Virus record (IMG/VR): IMGVR_UViG_3300042907_001080
Location: 1 to 64,000 of that record
Reading direction: 5' to 3' (one strand)
Length of the DNA: 64,000 bases
Positions 1,741-62,656 of the stretch are shown piece by piece. The number at the start of each line of letters is the position of its first letter. The stretch's first letter is position 1. Both the position numbers and the translations under genes were made by a program. The notes under the pieces are model-generated. The model saw nothing but the letters and a program-made list of their open reading frames with translations. It made no database searches and was not told the DNA's origin.

Positions 1741-1795
1741 AAAACTGCGCAGGATTTTTTTAGGTGCATAGACCCATTTCAGCTGTAAATACAAG

Positions 1796-1990
1796 ATGCC
1801 TAACATCTATCACTTTCTATCACTGTCACCCGCTCCCTTGTTCTTTCTAGGGTTTATATACAGCATCTTCAATCCCATGCACATATGCAGTTCTTGGCCC
1901 TATGAAATGGCAGTGATGTGGTTTGTGATGTTTCTAGCACACCTAACACCGTGGCTCATATGGTTCAAGCAGCGCAACTTTACCAGGTAA
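1796..1990 (+). CDS. small membrane protein
   Basis: Two hydrophobic segments; TAAATA at 1786-1791, 4 nt before ATG. Confidence 0.65.
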   Translation: MPNIYHFLSLSPAPLFFLGFIYSIFNPMHICSSWPYEMAVMWFVMFLAHLTPWLIWFKQRNFTR

Positions 1991-2201
1991 ACTAAAGCAG
2001 CAGTGATATGCACCTTGTATGACTGCCCATGATTCCCAGTAGTATATTGACAGTATGTCCGGTCTATCTTGGGGACACCATACTAGATCGTGTATGCGTA
2101 TCACACCCATGGGACCTTGTATTTCCACTGTGGTGTTGTATTCACCTGTGCTGGCAATCAGAGTTAGCATATGTGTATATAGCTGGTCACGTAAATAACT
2201 C

Positions 2202-2321
2202 ATGCGCTATAATTTGATATTGCCCAGTGGTGCGATTATTTCATTTAATCTGCTGAGCTGTGCTGAAATATATCGTCGTGCTTTGGGCGGGCACATAGAG
2301 CAGGTAGAGCCCAAAACATAG
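2202..2321 (+). CDS. small hypothetical protein (39 aa, absent from ORF track)
   Basis: MRYNLILPSGAIISFNLLSCAEIYRRALGGHIEQVEPKT*; TAAATA at 2192-2197 sits 4 nt before ATG, the spacing seen for many genes here. Confidence 0.55.
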   Translation: MRYNLILPSGAIISFNLLSCAEIYRRALGGHIEQVEPKT

Positions 2322-2436
2322 ACTGTAAAAAATCTTGCGCTGTGTGCTTTGCACAAAAAAAATTTTGCGCTGCGCTTCGCAAGGAATAATCTCCACCTTG
2401 ATCCCTATGGATAATTAAGCGTAGCAAGGATCGTTA

Positions 2437-3045
2437 ATGGAAATTTTAAATTTATTCCCCACAGCAGTTTTACAAGATAATCTAGGCAAAGATTTCACTG
2501 ATGCTGAGCAGGCATCGTTTTCTAAACTTCAGTCCCAAACAAGAGGCAATGCTGAAAACACCACCAGCATTAGTTCTGAAATTTTAGAACGTCCTGAATT
2601 TGCAGCGTTAAAACAGTTTTGTTTAGACAAGACCAAGTTCTACATGAAAAACATCCTTGCTGTGCCGGATACTGTGGAACCTTACATCACACTGAGCTGG
2701 TTGAATTTTACCAACAAAGGTCAACAGCACCATAGGCATGCTCACAGCAACAGCATTTTGAGCGGAGTGTTTTATATCCATGCCAAAAAAGACATGGACA
2801 AGATTCATTTTTTCAAAGATCGATACGTGGCCATTGACCTAGGATCAACTAGTTATAATCCGTTTAATTCAGAAACTTGGTGGGTTCCTGTGGGCACAGG
2901 AGACATTGTTATATTCCCGTCGTCGTTGTGTCACGGTGTTATACCAACAAACAACGATCACACTCGCGTCAGTCTAGCATTTAATGTGTTTGTTCGAGGG
3001 GAGATTGGCAGTAGAAGCGATCTAAAATGGTTGAATATCAAATGA
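2437..3045 (+). CDS. putative 2OG-Fe(II) oxygenase (TIGR02466 / 2OG-FeII_Oxy_5-like)
   Basis: HHRHAHSNSILSGVFY, IVIFPSSLCHGV, RVSLAFN. Confidence 0.8.
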   Translation: MEILNLFPTAVLQDNLGKDFTDAEQASFSKLQSQTRGNAENTTSISSEILERPEFAALKQFCLDKTKFYMKNILAVPDTVEPYITLSWLNFTNKGQQHHRHAHSNSILSGVFYIHAKKDMDKIHFFKDRYVAIDLGSTSYNPFNSETWWVPVGTGDIVIFPSSLCHGVIPTNNDHTRVSLAFNVFVRGEIGSRSDLKWLNIK

Positions 3046-3079
3046 CCTGTATAGTTGATTCTAGAAGATAAATATCTGT

Positions 3080-3289
3080 ATGAGCGAACAATTCCTATTA
3101 CCCATGGCCCGCAACATGATTACCGGGCAAACTGTGAAAAATCAAGATCTCACTGGCGACAGATTCACGCAGCGTCAACGTGTGTTAGCCGAAGACATGG
3201 CTGCGCAGTTGGCGCAACGAATGACAGCTAGAACCGGTGAAACGTGGCAGGGCTTTGTAAAACTGTATACCCCATCAGTTCGCAGTTGA
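3080..3289 (+). CDS. hypothetical protein
   Basis: TAAATA 3069-3074, 5 nt before ATG. Confidence 0.7.
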   Translation: MSEQFLLPMARNMITGQTVKNQDLTGDRFTQRQRVLAEDMAAQLAQRMTARTGETWQGFVKLYTPSVRS

Positions 3290-6609: not shown

Positions 6610-6969
6610 TCAAACTCCGTAGCGATTACGTTTAACCACAGCTACTGTGCTCTGTGTATTAACATTGTTTGTTTCTTCTGAGCCTTTACCAGTGACTTCT
6701 TGACTAGGTGCACCCATTAGTTTTTCGGCGCTGCGTCGAATTGCTGCGTCGCCTTCTGAATAGTCCACCGTGATAAAGTTACTGCCTAGAGGACCTTCCT
6801 GATCCATCGTGGATCCTGGACTGCCAGCCATAGCCACACCCATTCTATAGGCTAGATAGGGATTATTATTGTTGTCTAGATATGTGTTTTTACGGAGACT
6901 GCTGATACTAGCCTTAGCACTTTTACGTAAGGGTTTTGTAGTCTCATTGATAAACTCTTTTGCTCGCAT
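6610..6969 (-). CDS. hypothetical protein, possible internal head protein
   Basis: N-terminus MRAKEFINE resembles T4 capsid-targeting sequences; TAAATA 4 nt before ATG. Confidence 0.6.
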   Translation of the reverse strand: MRAKEFINETTKPLRKSAKASISSLRKNTYLDNNNNPYLAYRMGVAMAGSPGSTMDQEGPLGSNFITVDYSEGDAAIRRSAEKLMGAPSQEVTGKGSEETNNVNTQSTVAVVKRNRYGV

Positions 6970-6972
6970 CCA

Positions 6973-7212
6973 TTATTTAGCCCACATTAAGTGATAAGCT
7001 AATAGTGTTTGCTGATCGTAGAATTCTGCTACGAGCTTGAAATCGTCGTTGAGTTTATCTACAACTAACTGACATTTTTCTTTGGGCTGTTTATTGATCC
7101 AATTTATTAGATCTACTCCTACAGTTTTATGTACTTTGGGCCAGTCTACTTCTATTATATCTTTACCGTTGCGTGTGTGCCAATGATAAAGTTCAAACCT
7201 ACTACTCTTCAT
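6973..7212 (-). CDS. hypothetical protein
   Basis: 79-aa ORF overlapping helicase stop. Confidence 0.6.
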   Translation of the reverse strand: MKSSRFELYHWHTRNGKDIIEVDWPKVHKTVGVDLINWINKQPKEKCQLVVDKLNDDFKLVAEFYDQQTLLAYHLMWAK

Positions 7213-10259: not shown

Positions 10260-11271
10260 TTTCTAACCTTTCTAATTTATGTTCTTGTTGTTTCTTGGCC
10301 ATGTTAATTTTAATCTGTCCTTGTTGTGCTGTTTTTATTGCATCTACAAGCACAAATAACTTCCCATAACGATATACTGCATCTGCTACATCTTTGACAT
10401 CGGCATCCCAATTTGGTATAGCCACTGACCAACCAAGTTCTGCTGCACGATCATACAACACCAATCCTGCTCGATCTTGGTCTGGGATCACAATAACTTC
10501 TGCACCTAGACTGTTAATTATTCTACTTTGTTGTTCGGCAATCTCGTTGGTAAGAAGGGCTACACCGTCAATGGCCAAGGCATCAAACGGGCCTTCACAC
10601 ACAAATATATACTTCTGATTTTCTTTTTGTTGATCAAAATTGAAAACAAAATGAGGATGCTGATCTGATAGATATTTAGGTTTTCCGGCAGTTACTTTTC
10701 TTGCAGTATTACCTACAATACGTCCTTGCCACCTAAAGGGAATAATTACTCTATCAACATATCCTGGTGCGGGACTCCAGTAGAAGTTTTCGCTAGTGGG
10801 ATCGTATCCTCTACTAACTACATATTCAACAACTTCTACTAACTTTTGCTCTTCTTCAGTAGTTAATTTAGCATCTAGCCATTCTAACAAAGGCATTGCA
10901 CCCTCTGGTAATTGTTTGTCTGTGAATTCTAGCTTGATTTCCTGGTGTTCTGGGCGGTAATCATCGCCTTCTGTTCTCATGGCTTCGAACACTAGTTCTT
11001 TAATAGTGTCTTCGCTGGCGCCTAACCATCTGCACAGCGTTTTCATCTTTTCGCCTATGGTGCTACCAGGTTGCCACCCTGTGGTAAATTTGCAATTGAA
11101 ACAGTTATAGATTACACCATCACCGTCAAATCTTATGCCGGCACGTTTGCGAGTATCAGGACTATGCCCTCGATGTTGACAGCAGGGTGCATTGAATGAT
11201 GTCCATCCTGATGGGCTCGATTTAGCACGAGGTGGGAGCAGTGTTCGAAATTTATCAACGACAAGAGTCAT
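10252..11271 (-). CDS. DNA primase (T4 gp61-like)
   Basis: N-terminal Zn-binding CCQHRGH...CFNC; TOPRIM motifs VCEGPFD and IPDQD. Confidence 0.88.
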   Translation of the reverse strand: MTLVVDKFRTLLPPRAKSSPSGWTSFNAPCCQHRGHSPDTRKRAGIRFDGDGVIYNCFNCKFTTGWQPGSTIGEKMKTLCRWLGASEDTIKELVFEAMRTEGDDYRPEHQEIKLEFTDKQLPEGAMPLLEWLDAKLTTEEEQKLVEVVEYVVSRGYDPTSENFYWSPAPGYVDRVIIPFRWQGRIVGNTARKVTAGKPKYLSDQHPHFVFNFDQQKENQKYIFVCEGPFDALAIDGVALLTNEIAEQQSRIINSLGAEVIVIPDQDRAGLVLYDRAAELGWSVAIPNWDADVKDVADAVYRYGKLFVLVDAIKTAQQGQIKINMAKKQQEHKLERLENV

Positions 11272-11277
11272 ACTACA

Positions 11278-11306
11278 AGTATACTATCTATACAGTATCT
11301 TGTCAA
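11278..11306 (-). promoter_or_regulatory. sigma70-type promoter, 6 nt from primase ATG
   Basis: TTGACA-17 nt-TATACT-TGTAGT-ATG. Confidence 0.85.
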
Positions 11307-19173: not shown

Positions 19174-19179
19174 TTGTCC

Positions 19180-26276: not shown

Positions 26277-26282
26277 TATTCA

Positions 26283-38987: not shown

Positions 38988-38998
38988 AAGTATATTTA

Positions 38999-40585: not shown

Positions 40586-40599
40586 ATGTTTATTTAATG

Positions 40600-40627
40600 A
40601 AAAAAATAGGCTCCGAAGAGCCTATTT
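40600..40627 (-). terminator. intrinsic terminator with UUCG loop
   Basis: AAATAGGCTC-TTCG-GAGCCTATTT followed by T-run on minus strand. Confidence 0.85.
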
Positions 40628-42564: not shown

Positions 42565-42572
42565 ATGAGTAT

Positions 42573-43043: not shown

Positions 43044-43618
43044 ATCATACTTATCTGTGTTTTAACCCAGTCTCTATATTCTACAGTTTTAAATTCTATA
43101 TCTTTATTCACATACCAGGTTTCAAAATGACATTCACCTGTCCAAGATTTTCTTCTTCTAATAGCAAACACATTATTTACTGCAACTTTGTATCCTTTGC
43201 TATCTAGATATTCTTTTGCAGAATTACATGTTTCCAAAAATCCTTTTTCTTCTCGCCAATAATCGTCATGTTCAAAAGTTATACAGTCAAAAACAATACC
43301 CTGATTGATTACATTTTTAAGTGCCTGCAATGTTAATTCTGGAGGATTAATGTCACAACTCAAATATCCTATTCGATCTTTTAAATTATACTTGTAATTA
43401 ACTGCGTCTGTATAATAGCAAGAATTACCCCTGATGTTAGACCAGTCTGCTTTAAAATCTGCATTAAGTTCTAAACTAATACCCGACCAGCCCTGTTTTT
43501 CTAACAAAAACGTATTACTCAGTTTTATAGGATCTGCTGCACCAATTTCTACATATGATTTGTGATTGCAAATTTGAAGCGCAAAGATATCTTGACCAAC
43601 CTGTGAATAATGCATCAT
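43040..43618 (-). CDS. FkbM-like methyltransferase
   Basis: YSQVGQD, YVEIGAADP...SNTFLLEKQGWSGISLE, LSCDI. Confidence 0.75.
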   Translation of the reverse strand: MMHYSQVGQDIFALQICNHKSYVEIGAADPIKLSNTFLLEKQGWSGISLELNADFKADWSNIRGNSCYYTDAVNYKYNLKDRIGYLSCDINPPELTLQALKNVINQGIVFDCITFEHDDYWREEKGFLETCNSAKEYLDSKGYKVAVNNVFAIRRRKSWTGECHFETWYVNKDIEFKTVEYRDWVKTQISMI

Positions 43619-45511: not shown

Positions 45512-45527
45512 ACAAATATTTATGCCA

Positions 45528-45559
45528 CAAAAAAAGCCCGATTTTTAGTCGGGCTTTTT
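45528..45559. terminator. intrinsic terminator (potentially bidirectional) after tube gene
   Basis: AAAAAGCCCGA-TTTTTAG-TCGGGCTTTTT. Confidence 0.85.
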
Positions 45560-49200: not shown

Positions 49201-49782
49201 ATAATCTCCGATCTGTCCTACAGATGTTTTAGGAGCATTGTTTTCAATTTTAGAAGGACTGTCTGCATCTGTTAGCACTAACGGTACTTTGTTAGTAAAT
49301 TTCTGTCCGCCGGCTGTTGATGCTGCGGCACTGTTCCACTCTTGGATACCCCAAGTTGTGGCCTGTGTGTCCATCCACCATTTGCCGTTTACAGGGTTCG
49401 CTCCCGGGGCATCTACTTCTGCTGCGAGTTGGTCTAGATCTACATCAGCTCGAACAATAAATGCCGCGTTGCTTACACCTAGCAAACTATAGGCTGCTAA
49501 TAGTCCATATTCGTTGCGCTCTGAACCATGGATAGGAGTTGAACTCGCTGTCTGTTCAAAGAACGGAATCCCAAAAAGATCTGTGAGATCTCTCTGACTC
49601 GTAATTTTAAATGCCTTGCCAGCATTTGCTTTGGTTGTTGCTGAAGCTGTGTTTGTTCCAGCTCCGTTTGTTTTATCTTGGGCTGTAGCTACGACGATAA
49701 GAGGAACCGTACCAGGTTCTGCTGGTGTATAAAAACTCTCGTCGATTACCGTAACTTGTACGCCTGGTGATGTTAGTGCCAT
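46228..49782 (-). CDS. tail sheath protein (T4 gp18-like), 1184 aa
   Basis: MALTSPGVQVTVIDES start; C-terminal PWFAPAG, KVNPI, GQKT, DRINVARL, IAIEPVKAIEFI; TAAATA and SD AGGAG upstream. Confidence 0.93.
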   Translation of the reverse strand: MALTSPGVQVTVIDESFYTPAEPGTVPLIVVATAQDKTNGAGTNTASATTKANAGKAFKITSQRDLTDLFGIPFFEQTASSTPIHGSERNEYGLLAAYSLLGVSNAAFIVRADVDLDQLAAEVDAPGANPVNGKWWMDTQATTWGIQEWNSAAASTAGGQKFTNKVPLVLTDADSPSKIENNAPKTSVGQIGDYAVVFQTVGEAAAYTTANDLARIYYKSPGNGGVSAGGTPVDAGEWVLIGSNAWKASWPVAVSNTYSGTLSGTLFVNAQQITAGTLTQIANNINSPGIVGVTAKMLGNKLYIYSDGRSLGENTNVEVGDSALSADGQIKLENGTASWSTIGIDTGLYLSPKLQQSPHTDVPTYKRSDNPTSLQGYATGSVWIKTTEPNNGARWRAKQWSSATLSWVASEAPIYASTNAALYYLDRSGGGANISADTVFVQSNAQEHSGFDATPDTAEFRMWYRHIGIGQGTSITSNIIKSGTFTAASTRTFTLAESIVGQLALDAAKTITLSTAAGNAPTGDNSDADKFAAAINAAGFTNIEASVVQITLTQSRLVITHNDGGDFRLTDSTGNPLSTLFTPYNIKTRAGTENFYNISLGSGAAGAEDLAAGAAQDYLASGYQPLAAQDPRFSASPDAPLNEAADQQLWYNPNFADVDIMVHNGNTWVGYRHSTAPYFNQTDDTALTKRTGYLPIVAASNPYVSGVTVTGDLWISTADLENFPTIYRYNSNLTDIGDVTLRWELVDKTDQTTEEGVLFADARQGTSGGTATTAPSDDIADLITNNFLDPDAPDPALYPKGMLLWNLRRSGGNVKQYRNNYIDTATDNPRTSQSGGTNNGDPFVSGSGQTMESYYPDRWVTASGNNEDGSGSFGRKAQRKVVTQALKSVIDTSQEIRDEERRNFNIIACPGYPETMSNLVNLNIDRGITAFVIGDTPLRLPADATSLNNWGTNAELVTDNGDDGIVTYDEYLATYYPNGFTTDLSGSNAVVPASHMMLKTIALSDNVSFPWFAPAGTRRGGITNATAVGYIDAATGEFQTVALNEGQRDTLYELKVNPIPFFNGVGLVAYGQKTRARNASALDRINVARLVVYLRSQLNKLARPYLFEPNDKITRDEIKQAAESLLLELVGLRAIYDFAVVCDESNNTPSRIDRNELYVDIAIEPVKAIEFIYIPLRIKNTGEI

Positions 49783-49886
49783 ATCGCCTATTCTCCTGGT
49801 AATAGTTGCTCATAATATTTAGCATACTATTCCAAAAACAGCAAGTTAGGCACCGAACAAAAGGGGTCTAAAAGGGTAAATATCAA

Positions 49887-50225
49887 ATGCGACCACTATG
49901 CAAGGCCTGCGCACAGCGACCTAGAGCCATTAATTACTACAAAGACACTCGTGCCTATTACAGAACACTGTGTGAAATCTGTCTAGCACACGGTGCAAGT
50001 GCTCATGTTCCACGTTGGCAACGAGCAGGATACAAACCCAAACCCGTGTGTGAAAAATGCGGGTTTCGATCTCAACACGCCGAAGTATTTCGAGTGTTTC
50101 ATGTAGATGAAAATCTCAACAACTGCAGACCCTCAAATCTCAAAACCGTGTGCTTGAACTGCGCTGCTATCTTAGGCAAAGAGGGTATAACTTGGAGGCA
50201 AGGCGATCTTATTGCTGACTACTAG
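49887..50225 (+). CDS. HNH endonuclease-like protein with Cys-x2-Cys zinc ribbons
   Basis: CKAC, CEIC, CEKC, VFHVDENLNNCRPSNLKTVCLNC; TAAATA 4 nt before ATG. Confidence 0.75.
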   Translation: MRPLCKACAQRPRAINYYKDTRAYYRTLCEICLAHGASAHVPRWQRAGYKPKPVCEKCGFRSQHAEVFRVFHVDENLNNCRPSNLKTVCLNCAAILGKEGITWRQGDLIADY

Positions 50226-50877: not shown

Positions 50878-51632
50878 CCAGTTATCCAGGTATATCCGCT
50901 GCCGCCGGGAACCAATTTCATCAGATCGTCGGTGAGTTTTTCCATCTCAGTTTGACCTTCTGTGATCAGTGCTGTACCATTGAGTTGAGTACCACCCTGC
51001 GGACCTGCGATCTGTCCAAACTTGCTTCGAGCCTGTCCTAGCATCATTTTGCAGTTGGCTAACGCATAGTCTTTGATCCACTGTCCGGAATACACATCAT
51101 CAATAATCACAAAGTCAGGTCGGCTATTGTATACCTGCAACATCACAGATTCTTCGCCGCGAGGACGTTGATGTATGATCAGCTTGTGACTCTGTGGATG
51201 CCATGTGTAGTTAATAAATGAACCAAACATCTTGCCTACCAATTCTTGATACTGTGCAAACAGTTCATAGGTTAGCAAGCCGCCCATATTCGTTGAACTC
51301 AACAAATAGGTATTGGCATAGGCCAAGTTAAATGGCTCAAACACCGTTCCACCCGTTCCATTACCCGTTCTTGATCCCACCGATCTGCGGAATATCTGTC
51401 GAACCTGCTGTATTTCTTTGGGCAGGATATATTCGTTGGTGCTTTCTGTGAGGGTTAAAAACGCATAACTTTCTTCCACAGCGTTGTCGCTACGCTGACG
51501 GAAAACTGCTAGAGCACGATTAAGTGCTGTGTCGTAGTGGATGGGATCTAGTTCTACATCTACCATACCATCGCCTAGCATGGTTTTGCAGTAGTTGTAT
51601 ACGGAATTTTTGGCTTGATCTGATGTGCTCAT
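50874..51632 (-). CDS. neck protein (T4 gp13-like)
   Basis: LG...VDVEL, WIKDYALA..K...G..RSKF, PQGGTQLNG motifs; divergent from gp14-like gene. Confidence 0.8.
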   Translation of the reverse strand: MSTSDQAKNSVYNYCKTMLGDGMVDVELDPIHYDTALNRALAVFRQRSDNAVEESYAFLTLTESTNEYILPKEIQQVRQIFRRSVGSRTGNGTGGTVFEPFNLAYANTYLLSSTNMGGLLTYELFAQYQELVGKMFGSFINYTWHPQSHKLIIHQRPRGEESVMLQVYNSRPDFVIIDDVYSGQWIKDYALANCKMMLGQARSKFGQIAGPQGGTQLNGTALITEGQTEMEKLTDDLMKLVPGGSGYTWITG

Positions 51633-51659
51633 ACGAGTATTTATCGTAGCGGTAAATAT

Positions 51660-53057
51660 ATGACTATGCCAAGACTCAGTTTATACCGGCCCGAAAAGGG
51701 CAACGATTTCCGCTTTATTGATAAAACCGCCTGGGAAATGTTCCAAGTTGGCGGCACAGATGTGCTGGTGCACAGATATATAGGTCCTGGCACGGCCATA
51801 CAAGGCGATAGTCCTAGCACTCCTACCTACGCCACTGATAACGTAGCAAACATACAGGATCTGTTATTTTTAGAAAATCGAGATCGCAAATATGATCCTG
51901 ATGTTTATGTCATGCGCGGTGTATACAATATATCTGATATCGATTTTAATCTCAGCCAGTTTGGCCTGTTCCTACAGAATGACACTATTTTTATCACATT
52001 CCATATCACCGATACTGTAGAAAAACTAGGTCGTAAAATTATAGCAGGGGATGTGATAGAACTGCCGCATCTCAAAGACGAATACGCTTTGAATGATTTA
52101 ACTTTTGCCTTGAAACGTTTCTTTGTGATTGAAGAAGTTAGTAGAGCAGCGGAAGGATTTTCAGCCACATGGTATCCACATTTATATCGTGCCAAGTGCA
52201 AACCATTAGTAGACAGTCAAGAATTCAAACAGATTCTAGACGACATTGCAGACCGAGAATTCTTCAAAGGCACTTATAATTCAACCATAACTTACTATCC
52301 CGGCGATGTTGTATTAGCCGACAATGGCAAAAAATATCAAGTCATACAAGAAGTCACTGGTGTGGCTCCGCCTAATAATACCTATTATGCATTGGCAGAT
52401 ACATTGCGAGATGTGATCAGTACCTATGAAAAAGAAATGCAGATCACTGCCGCGGTGTTAGATCAAGCAGAAGCAGACGCACCACGCAGCGGTTACGATA
52501 CCAGCAAGTATTATACTCTACAGAGAACCAACGACGGTACCGCAGAATTAGCCAGTGTAGATGCATCGTTGGTGACTGTTGACGCAGCTACACAAGCCAC
52601 TGATGAAAATGGAGTTCCCCAATTTGACTCAGATGGTAATCCAATATTTGTTGGTCAGACTGCTAGCTCGGTGATATTACCGGCGGATGGTGATGGCTAT
52701 GAAGGTTATCTAACCAAAGACGGTTTACCTCCTAACGGTGCTCCATTTACCGCAGGCATTTCTTTTCCAAACAATCCTGTTAATGGACAATTTGCACTGC
52801 GAACAGATTATCTTCCTAACAGACTGTTTAGATTTGACGGAGTAAGATGGCGCAAGTTTGAAGACAATGTGCGCACGACTATGAGCAATCTTGGAGCCAG
52901 TGATGTAGCAGCCGGCGAACCTTTTGCAGACAAAGATGTGCGTCAGACACAAAAATCTACATTCATAAACAATCCCACTGTGAACACCATAGACGGTCAC
53001 ACAGTTAAAGAAAAGCAGAGTCTCAGCAAGGCTCTAAGACCTGAGGCAGACCTATAA
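51660..53057 (+). CDS. neck protein (T4 gp14-like) with inserted and C-terminal extra domains
   Basis: LLFLENRDRKY, SQFGLFL, GDVIELP; start may be ATG 51666. Confidence 0.7.
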   Translation: MTMPRLSLYRPEKGNDFRFIDKTAWEMFQVGGTDVLVHRYIGPGTAIQGDSPSTPTYATDNVANIQDLLFLENRDRKYDPDVYVMRGVYNISDIDFNLSQFGLFLQNDTIFITFHITDTVEKLGRKIIAGDVIELPHLKDEYALNDLTFALKRFFVIEEVSRAAEGFSATWYPHLYRAKCKPLVDSQEFKQILDDIADREFFKGTYNSTITYYPGDVVLADNGKKYQVIQEVTGVAPPNNTYYALADTLRDVISTYEKEMQITAAVLDQAEADAPRSGYDTSKYYTLQRTNDGTAELASVDASLVTVDAATQATDENGVPQFDSDGNPIFVGQTASSVILPADGDGYEGYLTKDGLPPNGAPFTAGISFPNNPVNGQFALRTDYLPNRLFRFDGVRWRKFEDNVRTTMSNLGASDVAAGEPFADKDVRQTQKSTFINNPTVNTIDGHTVKEKQSLSKALRPEADL

Positions 53058-54634
53058 TGGATTTTCACTACGACGGACAGATACGACGGTATGTCACGCA
53101 GTTCATGCGTGTGTTCATTGGATTTAAATATCAAGCAGGCGATGGCGAACAACGACAGATTCCTGTAATGTATGGCGATTTGACCAGACAGGTAGCCAGC
53201 ATTATCAAAGATAATTCTGAAAACAAAATGCCTACGGTGCCGAGAATAGCTTGTTATATCACAGGCATTGAGATGGATACTAACAGGCTCAGTGATCCCA
53301 CATTCGTGTCTAAGATACATGTGAGAGAACGCAGATTCACAGACGCCAGTGGCACAAGAGAATATTCGGGCGCACAGGGCGGCAATTACACTGTTGAAAG
53401 GCTCATGCCTACTCCATTCAAACTGACCATGAAAGCTGATATATGGACATCCAACACCGATCAAAAATTACAGTTGTTGGAACAGATATTAGTGCTGTTT
53501 AATCCCAGTTTAGAACTACAGACCACTGACAATTATATAGACTGGACCAGTCTCAGCGCCATGTATCTAACCGGCACTAATTTTTCCAGTAGGACAATAC
53601 CTCAAGGCGCAGAATCAGATATAGACATCTGCAGTCTTGATTTTGAAATGCCTGTGTATATATCACCACCGGCCAAGGTCAAAAAACTAGGCATAGTTCA
53701 AAGCATAATAGCCAATGTGTTCACAGAACAGGGCGATGTGATGGATCTTTCAGATCTAATATACAACACTTCTCAATCCAGTATGACCCTAGTTACTAAA
53801 ACTTATGGTAATTATCGAGTGTTACTGTTCAAATCTAACACAGGAACAGTCAATGATAATCAATATGATCTCACACTCGTGAATCCATTAGATGCTGTGC
53901 AGTCATTGGGGCTGAGTCAGAAAGAATTTAAAAATGGCGAACCGGTAGAGTGGTCAAAGATTCTAGAGATACAAGGCGGCTATGTGCCGGGCAGTGAGAT
54001 ATGGTTCAAAAAAGCCAGTGGCTATGAGATTGTGGGCACGTTTGTGATCAATCCTCTAGACCAGACTGTTCTCACGGTGACTTTAGATGCAGACACATAT
54101 CCTGCCAATGACGACATTGCCAGTAGTATCCCCGGCATAGCTGCTAGAGGCACGGTAGATGCTATCATAGATCCTTACAAGTATAATCCGTTAGAAGTCT
54201 ATGGATCATACTCGCAGATACCAGTAGGTTTAAGATTCTTGATGTTAGACGATGTCAACAACAGTGAGAATCGTGGAGGTTACATTAACCTTCCTTCTAA
54301 TCCTGCAGACAGCACAAACATACCATATAGAGGTCCGCAGGCCTGGCGTGATCCTAGTAATAACGATTCATCATGGGAAAATCAAGACGGCACGGATCCT
54401 GTGATCACAGCCAACTCTATTGTAGAGTGGACTGGGCAAACCTGGGCCACAATTTGGAATCCTGAAGATCATACATTGGAAGATGCAGCTATTGCAGGTG
54501 AAGATTTCTCACCCACACATATTCAAAATATCCGCACAGGCATCAAATACAAATGGGATGGCACTCAATGGCTCAAAGCATTTGAAGGTGAATATCTGCC
54601 AGGAGAGTGGAACTTCAAGACAGTGGGCGGATAA
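53057..54634 (+). CDS. tail terminator / sheath stabiliser (T4 gp15-like) with C-terminal extension
   Basis: FHYDGQIRRY, IPVMYG, LQLLEQILVLFNP. Confidence 0.8.
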   Translation: MDFHYDGQIRRYVTQFMRVFIGFKYQAGDGEQRQIPVMYGDLTRQVASIIKDNSENKMPTVPRIACYITGIEMDTNRLSDPTFVSKIHVRERRFTDASGTREYSGAQGGNYTVERLMPTPFKLTMKADIWTSNTDQKLQLLEQILVLFNPSLELQTTDNYIDWTSLSAMYLTGTNFSSRTIPQGAESDIDICSLDFEMPVYISPPAKVKKLGIVQSIIANVFTEQGDVMDLSDLIYNTSQSSMTLVTKTYGNYRVLLFKSNTGTVNDNQYDLTLVNPLDAVQSLGLSQKEFKNGEPVEWSKILEIQGGYVPGSEIWFKKASGYEIVGTFVINPLDQTVLTVTLDADTYPANDDIASSIPGIAARGTVDAIIDPYKYNPLEVYGSYSQIPVGLRFLMLDDVNNSENRGGYINLPSNPADSTNIPYRGPQAWRDPSNNDSSWENQDGTDPVITANSIVEWTGQTWATIWNPEDHTLEDAAIAGEDFSPTHIQNIRTGIKYKWDGTQWLKAFEGEYLPGEWNFKTVGG

Positions 54635-54642
54635 GTATCTGC

Positions 54643-55038
54643 ATGCAACAGCGTGCCGGATTATTATTTTTAGCTAAAACCACAGGTCGCATATTTCTAA
54701 TCTTAGATGATGAGCGATGGACTGTGCCTACCTTTCAACGCAATAACAGTCTTCTAGAGGATGCAGACGCATTGTTAACTCAATACGCACAGGGGCGTAT
54801 AGTTCCTATCGAACTGTATCTATCTGAAGATCGCGGGTTTGAGTATGGCACCTATGTGTGCGTGGTCGATCAAGAGTTTTTGACTATGGCGTCAAAGACT
54901 GTATGCTGGGCTGATTTAGATTGCCTTCCCAAACAACTACACTCGGGATTGAGAACTACATTAAATAATCAAGTAATACGTGTGAAAATAGAAACCATAT
55001 TGGAGTTAGAAAATGTCAAGTCTGTTACAAAAATCTAG
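54643..55038 (+). CDS. Nudix-fold protein lacking the Nudix box
   Basis: AGLLF...RIFLI...WTVP start and CW..L..LP..LH.GL end typical of Nudix, but no GX5EX7REUXEEXGU; TAAGTA 5 nt before ATG 54643. Confidence 0.5.
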   Translation: MQQRAGLLFLAKTTGRIFLILDDERWTVPTFQRNNSLLEDADALLTQYAQGRIVPIELYLSEDRGFEYGTYVCVVDQEFLTMASKTVCWADLDCLPKQLHSGLRTTLNNQVIRVKIETILELENVKSVTKI

Positions 55039-59666: not shown

Positions 59667-61949
59667 TTAAATACTGGCAAAGTTTTTAATCTGAATAGTT
59701 CCAATCATAGCAGCATGAACACTACACTGATATCTGTAGCTACCAGTAATTGAATCTGGAATCTTCCAATATAGTGTGCCCGATGTTTGACCTTGAGCCG
59801 ACGCTCCTGTAGTTACGGTGCCCCCTGTGGTCACGTGTACCAATCCTGTGTTATAATTTGCGCCAGCGCCGTCTTGTATCAAGAATGGATGTCCAGTCAC
59901 ATTGAGATTGAAAGCTATGGTGGTGCCATTGATGGCATAGACTGTAGGATCGTCAGTGGTGCCATATTGGTCAAATCTGTAAGCACTAGCTCCGTTGTTT
60001 GTGACATTAAGTCTTGTTATTGCCTGTAGATAAAATTGGTCTATGGTGAGATCTGCACGATCACTTAGTCCGGTGAATGATGTGGCGCCTGCGCTGACTG
60101 TGCTGGTAATTGTCACTGTGTCTGTGCCGGCATCCGTGGTTATTGAGATCCCTGTGCCTGCAGCTATAGTAAGAGTGTCAGTGGCCGAATCTGCTACCAC
60201 AGAACTCTGCCCAGCTACTGCTATTGTTTCAAAAGTGTTTTGGCCAGTACCTGAGTTGGTAATGGTCACAGTGTCTGTACCTGCATCTGTGGTAATAGTA
60301 ATGCCTGTACCTGCCACCAGTGTTAGTGTGTCTGTGGCTGAATCTGCTACAACATTCGATTGGCCTGCCACAGATATAGTGGCAAAACTGTCAGATGCTA
60401 ATCCTCCGCCCGAAACAGTAGCCCATGTATTGTCGCCTCTAAGGTAGGTGCTGGCACTAGGTGTTCCTGACGACCCGAGTCTTCCGATGGGTACTGTGCC
60501 GCTGGTGAGTTGTGTAGCATTTAATGCTGTGAGATTAGCCCCGCTGGCCGCTGGTAATGTTGCAGGAAGTGCTGTGAGATTTGCGCCACTCACTGCAGGC
60601 AACGTAGCCGGAAATCTGGCGTCCGGTATGGTGCCTGAAGTCAACTGCGTAGCATTTAACGAAGTAAGTGCTGAACCTCCACCACTGAAGTTAGTGGCCG
60701 TAAGTAGTCCAGCATCTGATATGGTTGCAGAGCTGGTTTGTATGATAGTACCGGTAGTACCGTCATAGCGTACAATAGCATTATCGACATATCCGCCACC
60801 ACTGCTAAGAACATCTCCTGTACCTGCTCCCGAAGCTCCTGCTGGCCCTTGCGGTCCTACTGGCCCAGGTACACCTACAGCAGAAGTATTCTGTCTTGTG
60901 CCGTCTGCAAATACGATTTCATTGCCTACTACCACATCTGATTCAAAATTTACAGCAGGAGTTACAGTGATAGCTGTGCTGTCTGTGCTGTCTATGGTGT
61001 TAGCAACAAATGTTATGTTGCCTGTGCTGGCTGTGCTGGTAATTGTAATGGCATCTGTGCCAGCATTAGTTGTGAGGGTTATACCTGCGCCTGCCACTAG
61101 TGTCAGCGTATCTGTGGGGGTGCCCGCAGCCACTGAGCTTTGCCCTGCTACTGCTATTGTGGCAAAACTATTAGACTCTAAGTCTGTATCATTAATCCAA
61201 TTTGTGCCGTTATACTTCAACACCTGGTTAATTGTTGGAGTTGTTAACACAACATCACTCAAGTCATTTAGTGCGCCTCCGCTACCGGTTCCTGATCCAG
61301 GATCTGCTACTGCTATTGACTGACCCATGGCCAAGTGATTCCAACACCAATAGTAGAGCAAAGCTGGCGTAGAATTAGTGACTGTGATACGCACCTGCCG
61401 TGCAGTGGCTGTGGCAAACATATTACTGTTATACACTGCCTGTGTAACATTAACATTATCTAGGTAATATTGCACATCTACAAGATAACTTGTGCCGCCG
61501 CCATTGTTTCCACTGAGATTATCTGCGGAAAAATTCAAAGGATGCTGATTTACTGTAGTTCCATTGACGTTAGGAAAGTAGACGTTGGTAGGATCGTCCT
61601 GAACAAACACATAGGTATAGCCCACTACAAAATTCAGTATAGGACGATAAACACCGTTAAGATTGTATTTGTTGCCTGTATCGCCGCCTTGAGGACCTGT
61701 GATTGTTACCTGATATGTGACTGTAGCCAGTTTAGAAACCACAGACTTAGATCTAAAATCACTGGTTGACACATTGGCAAGATCTCCTCTAGCTAAATTT
61801 AATCCGCCAGTGGATGATCCGTTGTAAATTCTAAGGGTATTAGCTGTTTGATCGTAAAAAACTTCACCTCTTAGCCCTGACTTTCTGTTCAGAAATTCAG
61901 CGTCTCTTGGAATTATTCTTACTGCATCGGATACGGATATTTTGGCCAT
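59667..61949 (-). CDS. tail fibre / virion appendage protein with two cupredoxin-like domains
   Basis: Mtd-N-like GEVFYD...TLRIYNG..TGG; HPL...YWCWNHLAMG and HPF...YQCSVHAAMIG; Gly-X-Y stretch; T/S/G/A-rich repeats. Confidence 0.75.
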   Translation of the reverse strand: MAKISVSDAVRIIPRDAEFLNRKSGLRGEVFYDQTANTLRIYNGSSTGGLNLARGDLANVSTSDFRSKSVVSKLATVTYQVTITGPQGGDTGNKYNLNGVYRPILNFVVGYTYVFVQDDPTNVYFPNVNGTTVNQHPLNFSADNLSGNNGGGTSYLVDVQYYLDNVNVTQAVYNSNMFATATARQVRITVTNSTPALLYYWCWNHLAMGQSIAVADPGSGTGSGGALNDLSDVVLTTPTINQVLKYNGTNWINDTDLESNSFATIAVAGQSSVAAGTPTDTLTLVAGAGITLTTNAGTDAITITSTASTGNITFVANTIDSTDSTAITVTPAVNFESDVVVGNEIVFADGTRQNTSAVGVPGPVGPQGPAGASGAGTGDVLSSGGGYVDNAIVRYDGTTGTIIQTSSATISDAGLLTATNFSGGGSALTSLNATQLTSGTIPDARFPATLPAVSGANLTALPATLPAASGANLTALNATQLTSGTVPIGRLGSSGTPSASTYLRGDNTWATVSGGGLASDSFATISVAGQSNVVADSATDTLTLVAGTGITITTDAGTDTVTITNSGTGQNTFETIAVAGQSSVVADSATDTLTIAAGTGISITTDAGTDTVTITSTVSAGATSFTGLSDRADLTIDQFYLQAITRLNVTNNGASAYRFDQYGTTDDPTVYAINGTTIAFNLNVTGHPFLIQDGAGANYNTGLVHVTTGGTVTTGASAQGQTSGTLYWKIPDSITGSYRYQCSVHAAMIGTIQIKNFASI
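60100..61175 (-). repeat. three ~48-aa repeats plus two LTxLNATQLTSGT repeats inside the fibre
   Basis: F(A/E)TI.VAGQS.V.A...TDTLT..AG.GI..TT.AGTD..TIT at about 61035-61175, 60255-60397, 60100-60243. Confidence 0.85.
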
Positions 61950-62015
61950 TGATATTCTTTGTTATTAGTCTATTATTTATTCTAAAAATGCAGACTGGAT
62001 ACCTATAAATAAACA

Positions 62016-62252
62016 GTGACTTTGACTATCAAAATACTACAAGATGACTGCGCTGTGAGTCCTGTTTTTCTCAAAGCCGTGGAATATCTTATAGAAAAAC
62101 AAAATAATACAGATCAGTTGTCTTTAGATCTACAGTCTGTGATTAGACATCACTGGCAAACAGAATTTAAATCATCAATTTCTGAAGATTGGAGTTGCAT
62201 TGAGTTTTCAAATAGTTTAGATCTGATGACTTTTTCATTGAAATTCAGTTGA
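62016..62252 (+). CDS. hypothetical protein
   Basis: GTG start 4 nt after TATAAATA (62004-62011). Confidence 0.6.
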   Translation: MTLTIKILQDDCAVSPVFLKAVEYLIEKQNNTDQLSLDLQSVIRHHWQTEFKSSISEDWSCIEFSNSLDLMTFSLKFS

Positions 62253-62589
62253 TTTCATCTACCCATACATTGTTGGTAGCAAGATCTATATCATATGTTG
62301 CAAGAAATTCCTGAACCCTATTCGAAGCATCTTTTCCAAAAAATGTCAACGAATGGAACTTTGTTTCCGCTAACACAGGATAATAAACCAAATAGAATTC
62401 ACAATAAGGATCCCAGGCAGCGTATACACCTATTACACCTGGTTTAAAATAAATTTCTTCCCAAACTGTTATATCTGCAACACAAGGAGTAGCAGTAGTT
62501 TGCAAATTGTTAGACGAGATGTTTTGACAATAATTTTTATAAAACTTGTGACTGAATATCTCGTCGCTGGAAATAAAACGGGTGGCCAT
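62245..62589 (-). CDS. hypothetical protein
   Basis: TAAATA 6 nt before ATG. Confidence 0.65.
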   Translation of the reverse strand: MATRFISSDEIFSHKFYKNYCQNISSNNLQTTATPCVADITVWEEIYFKPGVIGVYAAWDPYCEFYLVYYPVLAETKFHSLTFFGKDASNRVQEFLATYDIDLATNNVWVDEIN

Positions 62590-62656
62590 AATCAGTATTT
62601 ATGAAATAATTCCGTTGCTCTCTTAAATAGCATAGCTCGTATAAAAGGACAACAAT

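What the first reader, a model, noticed from the sequence alone, without database searches (positions are those of the whole stretch)
1786..62601. Late promoter TAA(A/G)TA sits a fixed 4-6 nt before start codons: apparent leaderless late mRNAs
Seen: motif-to-start gaps of 4 nt (starts 1796, 2202, 6969, 43043, 49887, 62016), 5 nt (3080, 33414, 38987, 40585, 42564, 45511, 51632, 54643) and 6 nt (62589), none with room for an SD. Genes likely needed in bulk (sheath, cupin operon) have the motif further upstream plus an SD. Known: T4 gp55-directed transcription starts about 6 nt downstream of TATAAATA, and most T4 late mRNAs have SD leaders. Inference: these transcripts begin at or within 1-2 nt of the AUG, suggesting a two-tier translation strategy (leaderless for low-copy, SD-led for high-copy proteins).
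Basis: partly seen in the sequence, partly recalled or inferred. Interest (0 to 1): 0.62.

Follow-up and report, generated by a model that had tools for sequence, protein, structure and literature searches.

The report
Promoters fused to start codons
In this uncultivated freshwater giant phage and hundreds of its relatives, about one gene in ten has its promoter placed so close to the start codon that the mRNA should begin at the AUG itself, with no ribosome-binding leader; its cultured relatives T4, PA5oct and Atu_ph07 do not show this layout.

Summary
The window is the first 64 kb of a 281.7-kb T4-superfamily jumbo phage contig from lake metagenomes. Genome-wide, TAAATA is the rarest of its 15 letter permutations and 35% of copies are intergenic. 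An ATG follows it after 5 nt 18 times and after 4 nt 11 times, against a background of about 2.7.

The phage encodes a gp55-type late sigma factor. The extended motif GATAAATA matches T4's TATAAATA, which sits at -13 to -6, so a 5-nt gap puts +1 on the A of ATG.

In the IMG/VR relatives examined, orthologous genes keep the motif, the spacing and ATG (488 of 488 distinct upstream sequences) while the spacer letters drift. Some sites lie directly after terminators with compensatory stem changes. Others form 27-33 bp divergent pairs.

At those two the layout is conserved in 84 of 84 ortholog upstreams.

Leaderless mRNAs are the best explanation (about 0.7), but no RNA data exist. The low-copy versus high-copy "two-tier" idea fits the annotated genes and is unproven.

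The parts
1786..1798 (+). TAAATA + 4 nt + ATG (64-aa ORF, 1796-1990)
   Evidence: The motif is kept at gap 4-5 in 8 of 10 distinct ortholog upstream sequences.
2192..2204 (+). TAAATA + 4 nt + ATG; weak member, the ORF is only 39 aa
   Evidence: Only 2 distinct ortholog sequences were found; both keep the layout.
3069..3082 (+). TAAATA + 5 nt + ATG (69-aa ORF, 3080-3289)
   Evidence: Kept in 14 of 16 distinct ortholog upstream sequences, with variable spacer letters.
6967..6979 (-). TAAATA + 4 nt + ATG (119-aa ORF, 6610-6969). The TAA of the motif is the stop codon of the upstream gene.
   Evidence: Kept in 14 of 18 ortholog upstream sequences.
11269..11306 (-). Sigma70-type promoter TTGACA-N17-TATACT, then exactly 6 nt, then the ATG of a Toprim-like (primase-like) gene (10252-11271)
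   Evidence: All 72 distinct ortholog upstream sequences keep the -35 box, a -10 box, a 6-nt gap and ATG, down to 45% aa identity.
26274..26311 (-). Sigma70-type promoter TTGACA-N17-TATACT, then exactly 6 nt, then the ATG of a 394-aa gene (25092-26276)
   Evidence: All 12 distinct ortholog upstream sequences keep the layout.
33412..33425 (-). TAAATA + 5 nt + ATG of a cytidylyltransferase-cupin gene (32653-33414)
   Evidence: Conserved in relatives.
38985..38998 (-). TAAATA + 5 nt + ATG of a 630-aa virion protein (37095-38987). The motif starts right after the terminase TGA stop.
   Evidence: In 28 ortholog upstream sequences the gap is 5 in 25, 4 in 2 and 7 in 1.
40583..40596 (-). TAAATA + 5 nt + ATG of the large terminase gene (38999-40585)
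   Evidence: All 37 ortholog upstream sequences have gap 5 (27) or gap 4 (10). TAAATA and the T at -1 are invariant; the rest of the spacer varies.
40604..40627 (-). Intrinsic terminator hairpin. Its U7 run ends 3 nt before the terminase TAAATA.
   Evidence: dG -13.9 kcal/mol, z -5.75. Across 33 relatives 98.8% of cells are paired and 3 pairs show compensatory changes; 0 of 500 shuffles reach this.
42562..42575 (-). TAAATA + 5 nt + ATG (198-aa ORF, 41968-42564). The TAA of the motif is the upstream stop codon.
   Evidence: Gap 5 in 32 of 34 ortholog upstream sequences.
43041..43053 (-). TAAGTA + 4 nt + ATG of a small-terminase-like gene (42573-43043)
   Evidence: The G variant is kept in all 37 ortholog upstream sequences (gap 4 in 32, gap 5 in 5).
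45509..45522 (-). TAAATA + 5 nt + ATG of a 362-aa tube-like paralog (44423-45511). This is not the main tail tube.
   Evidence: All 30 ortholog upstream sequences have gap 5 or 4.
45530..45559 (-). Intrinsic terminator hairpin plus U7 run, just upstream of the 45511 promoter
   Evidence: dG -14.7 kcal/mol, z -3.9. Stem letters differ among relatives while pairing is kept, by eye in alignment A2.
49877..49889 (+). TAAATA + 4 nt + ATG of an HNH-like gene (49887-50225)
   Evidence: All 44 ortholog upstream sequences have gap 4 or 5.
51630..51668 (.). Divergent promoter pair in a 33-bp spacer. TAAATA (51643-51638, - strand) + 5 nt serves ATG 51632 (head-tail adaptor). TAAATA (51653-51658, + strand) + 7 nt serves ATG 51666 (465-aa virion protein).
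   Evidence: Gap 5 in 44 of 44 upstream sequences for 51632; gap 7-8 in 43 of 43 for 51666. The ATG at 51660 is not conserved.
54632..54645 (+). TAAGTA + 5 nt + ATG (131-aa ORF, 54643-55038). The TAA of the motif is the stop codon of the gp15-like gene.
   Evidence: All 57 ortholog upstream sequences have gap 5 or 4; a few carry TAATTA instead.
62006..62018 (+). TAAATA + 4 nt + GTG (78-aa ORF); weak member
   Evidence: Found only in 6 near-identical contigs. A GTG start fits leaderless initiation poorly.
62587..62601 (-). TAAATA + 6 nt + ATG (114-aa ORF, 62245-62589); untested member
   Evidence: Found only in 6 near-identical contigs.
49780..49821 (-). Contrast class: TAAATA, then a 33-nt leader with an AGGAG SD, then the ATG of the tail sheath gene (46228-49782)
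62624..62659 (+). Contrast class: TAAATA, then a 27-nt leader with an AAGGA SD, then the ATG of a 2OG-Fe(II) oxygenase/cupin-type gene (62657-63286)
61947..61979 (-). Contrast class here: TAAATA, then a 24-nt leader, then the ATG of the 760-aa baseplate gene. In several relatives the same gene has TAAATA + 5 nt + ATG.

Best explanation
Proposed mechanism: (G)ATAAATA, with core TAAATA and tolerated variant TAAGTA, is the -10-like element of late promoters read by host RNA polymerase carrying the phage's gp55-type sigma factor.

At about 27 genes (13-15 in the window) the element ends 4-5 nt (rarely 6-7) before the ATG. By T4 geometry the box spans -13 to -6. Transcription then starts on the A of the AUG, or within 1-2 nt of it. 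The resulting mRNA has no Shine-Dalgarno leader and must be translated by recognition of the 5'-terminal AUG, the 70S or IF2-dependent leaderless route.

The same design is used with host sigma70-type promoters. At five genes TTGACA-N17-TATAMT ends exactly 6 nt before the ATG, the canonical distance from a -10 box to +1. One further gene has a 5-nt gap.

About 36 other TAAATA sites lie 10-55 nt (mostly 16-36 nt) upstream of starts. Most of these have an AGGAG-type SD and make ordinary leadered late mRNAs; sheath and the operon that holds the capsid gene are examples.

Shown here: the motif statistics, the gp55 homolog, the geometry, the conservation, the terminators and the lack of any SD. Inferred: the position of the 5' end, and that these mRNAs are translated as leaderless messages.
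For: 1. Enrichment and depletion. TAAATA is the rarest of its 15 permutations (184 copies) and the most intergenic (35% against 6-19% for the others). The peaks at gap 5 and gap 4 have p = 8e-10 and 1e-4. A motif-blind scan finds TAAATA at gap 5 as the top upstream signal.

2. Transcription machinery. A gp55-type sigma lies at G000:104078-104920(-): phrog_12791 at 2e-80, phrog_234 at 3e-24. Its only PDB hit is T4 gp55 (7d7c_F). The T4 pocket residues Y97 and T99 are conserved.

3. Geometry. T4's TATAAATA occupies -13 to -6. The proximal and distal classes here share G(-2) and A(-1) before TAAATA. The other 125 TAAATA copies have TT there instead.

4. Two promoter types, each at its own canonical distance from the ATG. 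The gap is 5 nt (modal) for the gp55-type box and exactly 6 nt for the sigma70 -10 box. All 84 distinct ortholog upstream sequences of the two sigma70-type genes keep the 6-nt gap.

5. Position. Some sites lie immediately after intrinsic terminators, one with compensatory stem changes. Others form divergent pairs with only 27-33 bp between the two ATGs.

6. Conservation. Across 15 genes and 488 distinct ortholog upstream sequences, all 488 start with ATG. The -1 base is a pyrimidine in 89%, against 48% in 12 SD-led control genes. The other spacer letters vary.

7. Replication and contrast. Five related large contigs carry TAAATA-N5-ATG 68 times against 9 reversed-pattern controls. T4, PA5oct and Atu_ph07 show no such excess (10/5, 15/12, 15/9). 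Their orthologous genes carry TAAATA 20-35 nt upstream, mostly with an SD.

8. No SD. No SD-like word of more than 4 nt stands before these starts, with one exception at 11-12 nt.
Against: - There is no RNA evidence. Every public run holding this DNA is a lake metagenome kept as DNA contigs.
- T4 gp33 and gp45 were not found by sequence, and the gp45 Pfam model found nothing. Only the sigma part of the T4 late system is shown. The contig is about 80% complete.
- Eight of the 27 sites are operon-internal, 3-16 nt after an upstream stop codon. There, reinitiation from a polycistronic mRNA could also serve the gene.
- Gap-4 and gap-6/7 sites require some flexibility in the start site, or 1-2 nt leaders.
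- The first 36 nt of these ORFs are no less structured than those of other genes.
- The host is unknown, so its ability to translate leaderless mRNA cannot be judged.
Confidence: 0.7

Rival explanations
1. TAAATA next to the ATG works in the RNA, not the DNA. It would be an A/U-rich, SD-independent ribosome-loading or reinitiation element (for example bound by protein S1) inside longer transcripts that start further upstream.
For: Eight sites lie 3-16 nt after an upstream stop codon, often sharing its TAA. A/U-rich leaders are known translational enhancers (general knowledge). No RNA data exclude this.
Against: - The same motif, with the same G and A flank, occurs 16-36 nt upstream of SD-led genes, where it cannot be a ribosome site.
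- It matches the T4/CBB late-promoter box, and a gp55 homolog is present.
- Some sites lie directly after conserved terminators or inside 27-33 bp divergent spacers, so an upstream start would have to lie beyond the terminator or inside the neighbouring gene.
- It does not explain sigma70-type promoters at exactly 6 nt.
- An S1-type enhancer would not need a fixed 4-5 nt spacing or a pyrimidine at -1.
Confidence: 0.12
2. The motifs are real promoters, but the AUG-proximal transcripts are poorly translated or not translated. The proteins would come mainly from read-through or upstream polycistronic mRNAs by translational coupling.
For: Leaderless mRNAs are translated poorly in E. coli-like hosts (general knowledge; review read). 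Eight of the 27 sites are operon-internal.
Against: - 19 of the 27 sites are in divergent spacers, after terminators, or after gaps of 29 nt or more, with no SD anywhere. No alternative ribosome entry is visible there.
- ATG is strict (488 of 488) and a pyrimidine stands at -1. This points to selection on the 5'-terminal AUG itself.
- In the baseplate gene, GTG starts appear only in the relatives that have a leader.
Confidence: 0.1
3. The start codons are mis-assigned. The true starts would lie downstream with their own SD, and the motif-ATG spacing would be incidental.
For: One such case was found: the ATG at 51660 is not conserved and the real start is 51666.
Against: These ATGs are the first start codon after an in-frame stop, which lies 0-17 codons upstream in most cases. 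Orthologous proteins align from residue 1. The ATG and its distance to the motif are conserved while the flanking letters change.
Confidence: 0.04
4. The pattern is a chance product of AT-rich intergenic DNA and TAA stop codons lying close to the next start.
For: Within the window alone, the gap-4 class is not significant (5 against 2.4; 10 of 100 shuffles reach 5).
Against: Genome-wide p-values are 8e-10 and 1e-4. Other TAA-starting hexamers are flat. The excess replicates in five related contigs, 68 against 9. The layout is conserved in 15 genes.
Confidence: 0.01

Closest known systems
Bacteriophage T4 late promoters (TATAAATA read by gp55, activated by gp33 and the gp45 clamp)
   Same: - A gp55-family sigma is encoded.
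- The promoter is an A/T-rich -10-like box with no -35 element, and 6 of its 8 positions are identical (GATAAATA against TATAAATA).
- It precedes virion genes.
- The T4 box at -13 to -6 predicts +1 at the sixth nt after the box.
   Different: - In T4 the motif shows no excess directly before ATGs (10 against 5 controls).
- Here about 43% of gene-proximal TAAATA sites (27 of 63) abut the ATG.
- T at -13 is replaced by G.
- gp33 and gp45 homologs were not detected.
Predicted late promoters of the related jumbo phages CBB/GAP32 (ATAAATA), PA5oct and Atu_ph07
   Same: The gene order is syntenic in PA5oct: adaptor, dNMP kinase, sheath, tube, tube-like paralog, head closure, terminase, virion protein. 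Sheath is 39-44% identical. TAAATA stands upstream of the same late genes. CBB has a gp55-like sigma and no detected gp33 or gp45.
   Different: In PA5oct and Atu_ph07 the orthologous genes have TAAATA 20-35 nt upstream, mostly with an SD. No 4-5 nt class is seen. In the freshwater clade the leaders are gone.
Thermus thermophilus phage phiYS40, where most middle and late mRNAs are leaderless
   Same: A large lytic phage whose later transcripts start at the start codon. It is reported to shift host IF2 and IF3 levels in favour of leaderless translation (review text read).
   Different: phiYS40 is an unrelated phage with different promoters, and its host phylum (Deinococcus-Thermus) is naturally rich in leaderless mRNAs. 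There the 5' ends were mapped experimentally. Here they are only inferred, and only about 11% of genes are affected.
Bacterial leaderless genes with a -10 box a fixed 6-7 nt before the start codon (Actinobacteria, Deinococcus; lambda cI from PRM)
   Same: The layout is the same: a -10 element at a fixed short distance from an AUG, with no SD. Deinococcus deserti has 47% of its start sites exactly at the start codon (abstract listed). The rules for leaderless initiation are in the review read.
   Different: Here a phage uses the layout with two promoter classes, each at its own distance (6 nt for sigma70-type, 5 nt for gp55-type). Most of its other genes have strong AGGAG SDs.
Giant phages phiKZ and AR9, which have mapped transcription start sites
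   Same: They are jumbo phages with short late-promoter motifs.
   Different: They use their own multisubunit RNA polymerases. No leaderless transcript was detected in the early-infection dRNA-seq map of phiKZ. AR9 5' UTRs are 26-491 nt.

Membership tests
T4-type late transcription (gp55 system) | The phage encodes a gp55-family sigma factor | tested here: met
   G000:104078-104920(-). T4 gp55 search gives E 1e-6. phrog_12791 scores 2e-80 and phrog_234 3e-24. The only PDB hit is 7d7c_F (T4 gp55); Y97 and T99 are conserved and H95 is F.
T4-type late transcription (gp55 system) | The promoter is a TATAAATA-like -10 box with no -35 element, upstream of late (virion) genes | tested here: met
   The consensus is GATAAATA. 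Nothing is conserved further upstream. It precedes sheath, baseplate, terminase, adaptor, the head-gene operon that holds the capsid gene, and giant virion-size ORFs.
T4-type late transcription (gp55 system) | gp33 co-activator and gp45 sliding clamp | tested here: inconclusive
   T4 gp45, T4 gp33 and Pfam PF02916 gave no match in the contig. The contig is about 80% complete and single-sequence searches are weak. CBB also lacks detectable homologs.
T4-type late transcription (gp55 system) | Transcription starts at the sixth nt after the box | not testable with these tools
   No RNA run holds this phage.
Leaderless mRNA | The 5' end of the transcript lies at, or within a few nt of, the start codon | not testable with these tools
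   Inferred from promoter geometry only: a 5-nt gap for the gp55-type box and a 6-nt gap for the sigma70-type -10 box.
Leaderless mRNA | No Shine-Dalgarno sequence or other leader element | tested here: met
   Positions -11 to -5 or so are taken up by the promoter box. Only 4-nt chance words (TAAG, TGAT) were found, plus one TAAGG at 12 nt.
Leaderless mRNA | The start codon is AUG (5'-terminal AUG recognition) | tested here: met
   26 of 27 sites in this genome. All 488 distinct ortholog upstream sequences start with ATG, against 14 non-ATG among 393 for SD-led genes. The filter that alignments begin at residue 1 favours ATG in both sets.
Leaderless mRNA | Translated by 70S or IF2-dependent initiation; insensitive to kasugamycin | not testable with these tools
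   This needs experiments.
Sigma70-type (host RpoD) promoter | TTGACA, a 16-18 nt spacer, TATAAT, and +1 about 7 nt after the -10 box | tested here: met
   Five genes have TTGAC(A/C)-N17-TATA(A/C)T-N6-ATG. At the two tested, this is conserved in all 84 ortholog upstream sequences. The position of the start site is inferred.

The most novel reading that the evidence does not exclude
A widespread clade of uncultivated freshwater jumbo phages has systematically removed 5' leaders. Both host sigma70-type promoters and gp55-type late promoters are fused to AUG codons at their respective canonical distances, down to 27-bp bidirectional promoter-and-start modules. About 11% of genes, including terminase, adaptor and baseplate genes, would then be expressed from leaderless mRNAs in a host that otherwise uses strong SDs. 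In the strongest form of this reading, the phage also tunes initiation itself: this genome carries its own IF1 behind an early-type promoter. Leaderless versus SD-led would then be a regulatory tier.
Probability: 0.3. Interest if true: 0.75.

Novelty: new variant of a known kind. Interest (0 to 1): 0.62.

Why it matters
If the 5' ends are where the geometry predicts, this is the first T4-superfamily lineage I could find in which late promoters, and early sigma70-type promoters too, are fused to start codons. My literature searches found no report of this for T4-like or Rak2/PA5oct-like phages.

- **Natural experiment.** Orthologous genes are leadered in cultured relatives and leaderless-type here, and even vary within the clade. 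That gives a way to study how and why 5' leaders are lost.
- **Minimal modules.** A 6-8 bp promoter plus AUG makes a very small expression unit, and a 27-bp spacer makes a bidirectional one. Both can be tested directly in vitro.
- **Host.** The layout implies that the unknown host translates 5'-terminal AUGs well, or that the phage helps it to.
- **Annotation.** Gene callers and promoter predictors that expect an SD will misplace starts in these abundant lake phages. The motif-ATG rule gives exact start codons.

Tried and rejected
- **RNA evidence.** The one run search returned only lake or freshwater metagenome runs kept as DNA contigs. Read laying was therefore not used, because contigs cannot show RNA 5' ends.
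- **Near-identical cultured phage.** Megablast against the phage collection found none.
- **Host inference.** The closest bacterial homologs of a nucleotide-sugar dehydratase were scattered across Spirochaetes, Patescibacteria, Bacillota and others at 68% identity or less. The IF1 atlas neighbours are mostly viral clusters. The host stays unknown.
- **gp33 and gp45.** Searched with the T4 proteins and, for gp45, with Pfam PF02916; nothing was found.
- **Phage translation factors.** S21 and IF3 are absent. IF1 is present but is not found in a 280-kb relative that shares the promoter-ATG layout. A necessary link between IF1 and leaderless expression is rejected.
- **5' structure.** The first 36 nt of leaderless-class ORFs are no less structured than those of other genes (p = 0.29-0.42).
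- **Extended -10 reading.** Reading G(-2) as part of a sigma70 extended -10 (TGn) is rejected, because T is not preferred at -3.
- **The 362-aa "tail tube" hit at 45511.** I first took this as a high-copy counter-example to the two-tier idea. The true tube is the SD-led 216-aa gene at 45575-46225 (2.6e-49 against 7e-13 for the same PHROG), so the counter-example was withdrawn.
- **phiKZ-like TATG late promoter with a phage RNA polymerase.** I considered this from memory at the outset. It was dropped once the T4-type terminase, sheath, gp15-like and gp55-like genes were found.

Full report
**What the window is**

The window is the first 64 kb of a single 281,658-bp viral contig with 40% G+C. 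It comes from IMG/VR, is classed as linear, and is about 80% complete by CheckV. Public runs that hold it are lake-water metagenomes.

Its genes place it in the T4 superfamily of jumbo myoviruses:
- a T4-type large terminase, a 1184-aa tail sheath, a gp15-like sheath stabiliser, a DnaB-like helicase, UvsX and gp32-like proteins;
- a gp23-family major capsid protein at G000:88193-89359.

The sheath is 39-44% identical to those of Sinorhizobium phage Phosso, Agrobacterium phage Atu_ph07 and Pseudomonas phage PA5oct. It is about 50% identical, over part of its length, to those of the Rak2/CBB group. Gene order around the sheath and terminase is syntenic with PA5oct.

**Check of the observation**

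The hexamer is under selection in this genome:
- TAARTA is depleted in the window, 64 copies against 103 expected.
- Genome-wide, TAAATA is the rarest of the 15 permutations of its letters (184 copies).
- It has by far the highest intergenic share, 35% against 6-19% for the others, in a genome that is 7.4% intergenic.

Without any gene calls, an ATG follows TAAATA after exactly 5 nt in 18 cases and after 4 nt in 11. The background is 2.7 per gap (Poisson p = 8e-10 and 1e-4). The reversed-pattern controls give 3 and 4. About twenty control hexamers, including others that begin with TAA, show no such peak.

I also ran a motif-blind scan of every hexamer at every position upstream of 300 crudely called genes, always using the longest-ORF start. 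TAAATA at gap 5 is the single strongest cell. Nearly all the other strong cells are AGGAG-type Shine-Dalgarno words.

In the window alone, the gap-5 class is significant (8 against 2.5; 0 of 100 shuffles reach 8). The gap-4 class is not significant by itself (5 against 2.4; 10 of 100).

With gene calls, 27 genes carry TAA(A/G)TA 4-7 nt before an ATG that is the first or nearly the first start codon of the ORF.

Weak members:
- 2202 opens a 39-aa ORF.
- 62016 is a GTG start.
- 62589 has gap 6. Like 62016, it occurs only in six near-identical contigs and cannot be tested by comparison.

One correction to the gene starts: the ATG at 51660 is not conserved. The start of that gene is 51666, which lies 7 nt after the motif.

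**What the motif is**

The genome encodes a gp55-type late sigma factor at G000:104078-104920(-):
- a search with T4 gp55 gives E = 1e-6;
- PHROG "sigma factor for late transcription" scores 2e-80, and the T4 gp55 PHROG scores 3e-24;
- the only solved structure matched is T4 gp55, chain 7d7c_F.

In that alignment, T4 residues Y97 and T99 are conserved and H95 is replaced by F. Y97 and T99 line the pockets that take the flipped adenines at -12 and -8 (read against PMC7892883).

I aligned the sites on the motif. The 24 ATG-proximal sites and the 36 sites lying 10-55 nt upstream of genes share a preference for G at -2 and A at -1 relative to the motif, giving GATAAATA. The remaining 125 TAAATA copies, mostly inside genes, carry TT there. 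The two classes are therefore one signal. It is the T4 late box TATAAATA with one change.

In CBB and GAP32, jumbo phages of the Rak2/CBB group, ATAAATA has already been proposed as the late promoter, next to a gp55-like sigma and with no detectable gp33 or gp45 (PMC5259590). Here too gp33 and gp45 were not detected. Only the sigma part of the T4 system is shown.

**Why the transcripts should be leaderless**

1. *Geometry.* In T4 the box occupies -13 to -6 (PMC2988020). Five bases separate it from +1, so the modal 5-nt gap here puts +1 on the A of the ATG.

2. *A second promoter class gives an independent calibration.* Canonical sigma70-type promoters, TTGAC(A/C)-N17-TATA(A/C)T, end exactly 6 nt before the ATG of five genes. 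Their starts are at G000 11271, 26276, 104040, 181308 and 219161. A sixth gene has a 5-nt gap. The other promoters of this type upstream of genes mostly lie 20-43 nt away, usually with an SD. Six bases is the textbook distance between a -10 hexamer and +1. Each of the two promoter types therefore sits at its own canonical distance from the AUG. It is hard to explain this unless the AUG is the 5' end.

3. *Position.*
   - The terminase site and the 45511 site follow intrinsic terminators directly. The hairpins have dG of -13.9 and -14.7 kcal/mol (z -5.8 and -3.9) and U7 runs.
   - Across 33 relatives the terminase hairpin is 98.8% paired, with three compensatory pairs; 0 of 500 shuffles reach this.
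   - Nine sites lie in divergent spacers. At G000:246945/246973 the whole 27-bp spacer is 5 + 6 + 5 + 6 + 5 nt: two opposed TAAGTA boxes and their spacers. At 51632/51666 the spacer is 33 bp.
   - In all, 19 of the 27 sites are where a promoter is needed anyway.

4. *No SD.* The box occupies the place where an SD would be. Only chance 4-nt words were found.

**Comparative evidence**

Six scans of IMG/VR returned between 35 and 595 related stretches each; up to 80 loci per scan were kept.

For 13 late-type and 2 sigma70-type genes I collected 488 distinct upstream sequences of orthologs, some as low as 35-45% protein identity:
- The start codon is ATG in all 488.
- The late box lies at 5 or 4 nt in nearly all. 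The exception is 51666, which is always at 7-8 nt.
- The sigma70 -10 box lies at 6 nt in 84 of 84.
- The base at -1 is a pyrimidine in 89% (T in 73%), while the other spacer letters drift.

In 12 SD-led control genes (393 upstream sequences), the -1 base is a pyrimidine in 48% and 14 starts are not ATG. The requirement that alignments begin at residue 1 favours ATG in both sets.

A pyrimidine at -1 with a purine at +1 is the usual preference of bacterial RNA polymerase at start sites. It has no evident coding or ribosome-binding reason. Within this genome the same contrast holds: 18 of 23 against 49%, p = 0.008.

Neighbouring SD-led genes keep their AGGAG and lack the motif. Examples are the ssDNA-binding protein, the true tail tube and the dNMP kinase; the last has a conserved TATAAT box and a leader.

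Five related large contigs carry TAAATA-N5-ATG 68 times, against 9 for the reversed control pattern. T4, PA5oct and Atu_ph07 give 10/5, 15/12 and 15/9. In PA5oct and Atu_ph07, late genes in the syntenic region carry TAAATA 20-35 nt upstream, mostly followed by an SD. These include the tail tube and the gene after terminase in both phages, the adaptor in PA5oct and the terminase in Atu_ph07.

The ATG-proximal layout is thus a derived trait of the freshwater clade. It is also labile inside the clade. The 760-aa baseplate gene (start 61949) has a 24-nt leader here, TAAATA-N5-ATG in several relatives, and an SD leader in others. GTG starts appear only in the leadered versions.

**The two-tier idea**

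The annotations fit it.

SD-led genes:
- major capsid protein;
- sheath;
- the true tail tube at 45575-46225.

Leaderless-type genes:
- large terminase;
- a small-terminase-like protein (43043);
- head-tail adaptor (51632);
- a 1143-aa baseplate wedge subunit (G000:111044);
- a tube-like paralog (45511);
- two virion proteins;
- an HNH-like endonuclease;
- a cytidylyltransferase-cupin enzyme;
- a radical SAM protein.

This is a correlation over a handful of genes. Three things show that copy number cannot be the whole story. The baseplate gene changes state among relatives. A leaderless mRNA can serve only the first cistron of an operon. And the same layout occurs at sigma70-type promoters of a Toprim-like primase gene and an SbcD-like nuclease gene. 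I rate the two-tier reading at about 0.3.

**Rivals**

- An RNA-level, SD-independent loading or reinitiation signal remains possible for the eight operon-internal sites. It does not explain the distal class, the sites after terminators, or the sigma70-type class. I rate it 0.12.
- The promoters could be real but the transcripts poorly translated (0.1).
- Mis-assigned starts are unlikely (0.04).
- Chance is excluded (0.01).

**Comparison with what is known**

Leaderless phage messages are known: lambda cI, and most middle and late mRNAs of Thermus phage phiYS40, which also shifts IF2 and IF3 levels. Bacteria rich in leaderless genes show a -10 box at a fixed short distance from the start codon.

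The giant phages phiKZ and AR9, which have mapped 5' ends, show none: no leaderless transcript was detected in the early-infection map of phiKZ, and AR9 UTRs are 26-491 nt. My searches found no report of T4-type late promoters fused to start codons.

I therefore class this as a new variant of a known kind.

**Limits**

- There are no RNA data. Read laying was not run, because only DNA contigs were on offer.
- The host is unknown.
- The gene calls come from a simple codon-bias caller that I wrote. The central statistics do not depend on it.
- Relatives are metagenomic contigs, and many are closely related. The counts of distinct sequences are not independent events.

Noticed in passing
window 11269-11306 (-) and 26274-26311 (-); also G000 starts 104040, 181308, 219161 (gap 6) and 158504 (gap 5): Full sigma70-type promoters (TTGACA-N17-TATAMT) end exactly 6 nt before the ATG. 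Annotated products are a Toprim-like primase-type protein and an SbcD-like nuclease; the others are unannotated. These are predicted leaderless early or middle mRNAs.
   Followed up: yes
G000:265229-265447 (-) (L255:1495-1713): The phage encodes a full-length translation initiation factor IF1 (72 aa; PF01176 at 64.5 bits). It lies in an operon behind a TTGACA-N17-TATAAT promoter with an SD leader. Its nearest atlas clusters are mostly viral IF1 families. It was not found in a 280-kb relative that shares the promoter-ATG layout, nor in PA5oct, Atu_ph07 or T4.
   Followed up: partly
G000:246945-246973; window 51632-51666: Minimal bidirectional modules. Two opposed TAA(A/G)TA boxes and their spacers fill the entire 27-bp (5+6+5+6+5) or 33-bp gap between two divergent ATGs. 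By T4's -12 to +2 opening, the two open complexes would overlap.
   Followed up: partly
window 59667-61979 (-): The 760-aa baseplate gene has a 24-nt leader here. In relatives it has TAAATA-N5-ATG, TAAATA-N9-ATG or an SD leader. GTG starts occur only in the leadered versions.
   Followed up: partly
window about 8677-33414, especially 16618-20271: A low-G+C stretch (35-36%, against 40-45% elsewhere) carries nucleotide-sugar genes:
- a Polysacc_synt_2 (FnlA/CapE-like) dehydratase;
- an RmlD-like reductase;
- a UDP-GlcNAc 2-epimerase;
- a NodU/CmcH-type carbamoyltransferase (8677-10146);
- a cytidylyltransferase-cupin fusion (32653-33414).
Its role is unknown; modification of a surface glycan or of DNA are possibilities.
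   Followed up: partly
window 49842-49876 (+): A conserved purine-rich element (AAAGGGG, then 3-5 nt, then AAAAGG(G/T)G) lies directly upstream of the TAAATA of the HNH-like gene 49887 in nearly all 44 distinct relatives. It is too far from the ATG (11-12 nt) for a good SD. Its function is unexplained.
   Followed up: no
window 33426-33449 (-): Upstream of the 33414 promoter, relatives keep an ATAAT(A/G) box 8-9 nt before TAAATA. A second TAAATA at 33449-33444, overlapping the upstream stop codon, is not conserved. This may be a tandem early and late promoter arrangement.
   Followed up: no
window 54632-54637 and orthologs: The fourth position of the box tolerates change gene by gene. TAAGTA is kept at 43043 and 54643 across relatives, and a few orthologs of 54643 carry TAATTA. 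This may tune promoter strength.
   Followed up: no
G000, whole contig: ATG at gap 1 after TAAATA is also somewhat raised (8 against 2.7). At least two cases are explained: the non-conserved ATG at 51660, and an ATGATG at 128297/128300. The rest were not examined.
   Followed up: no
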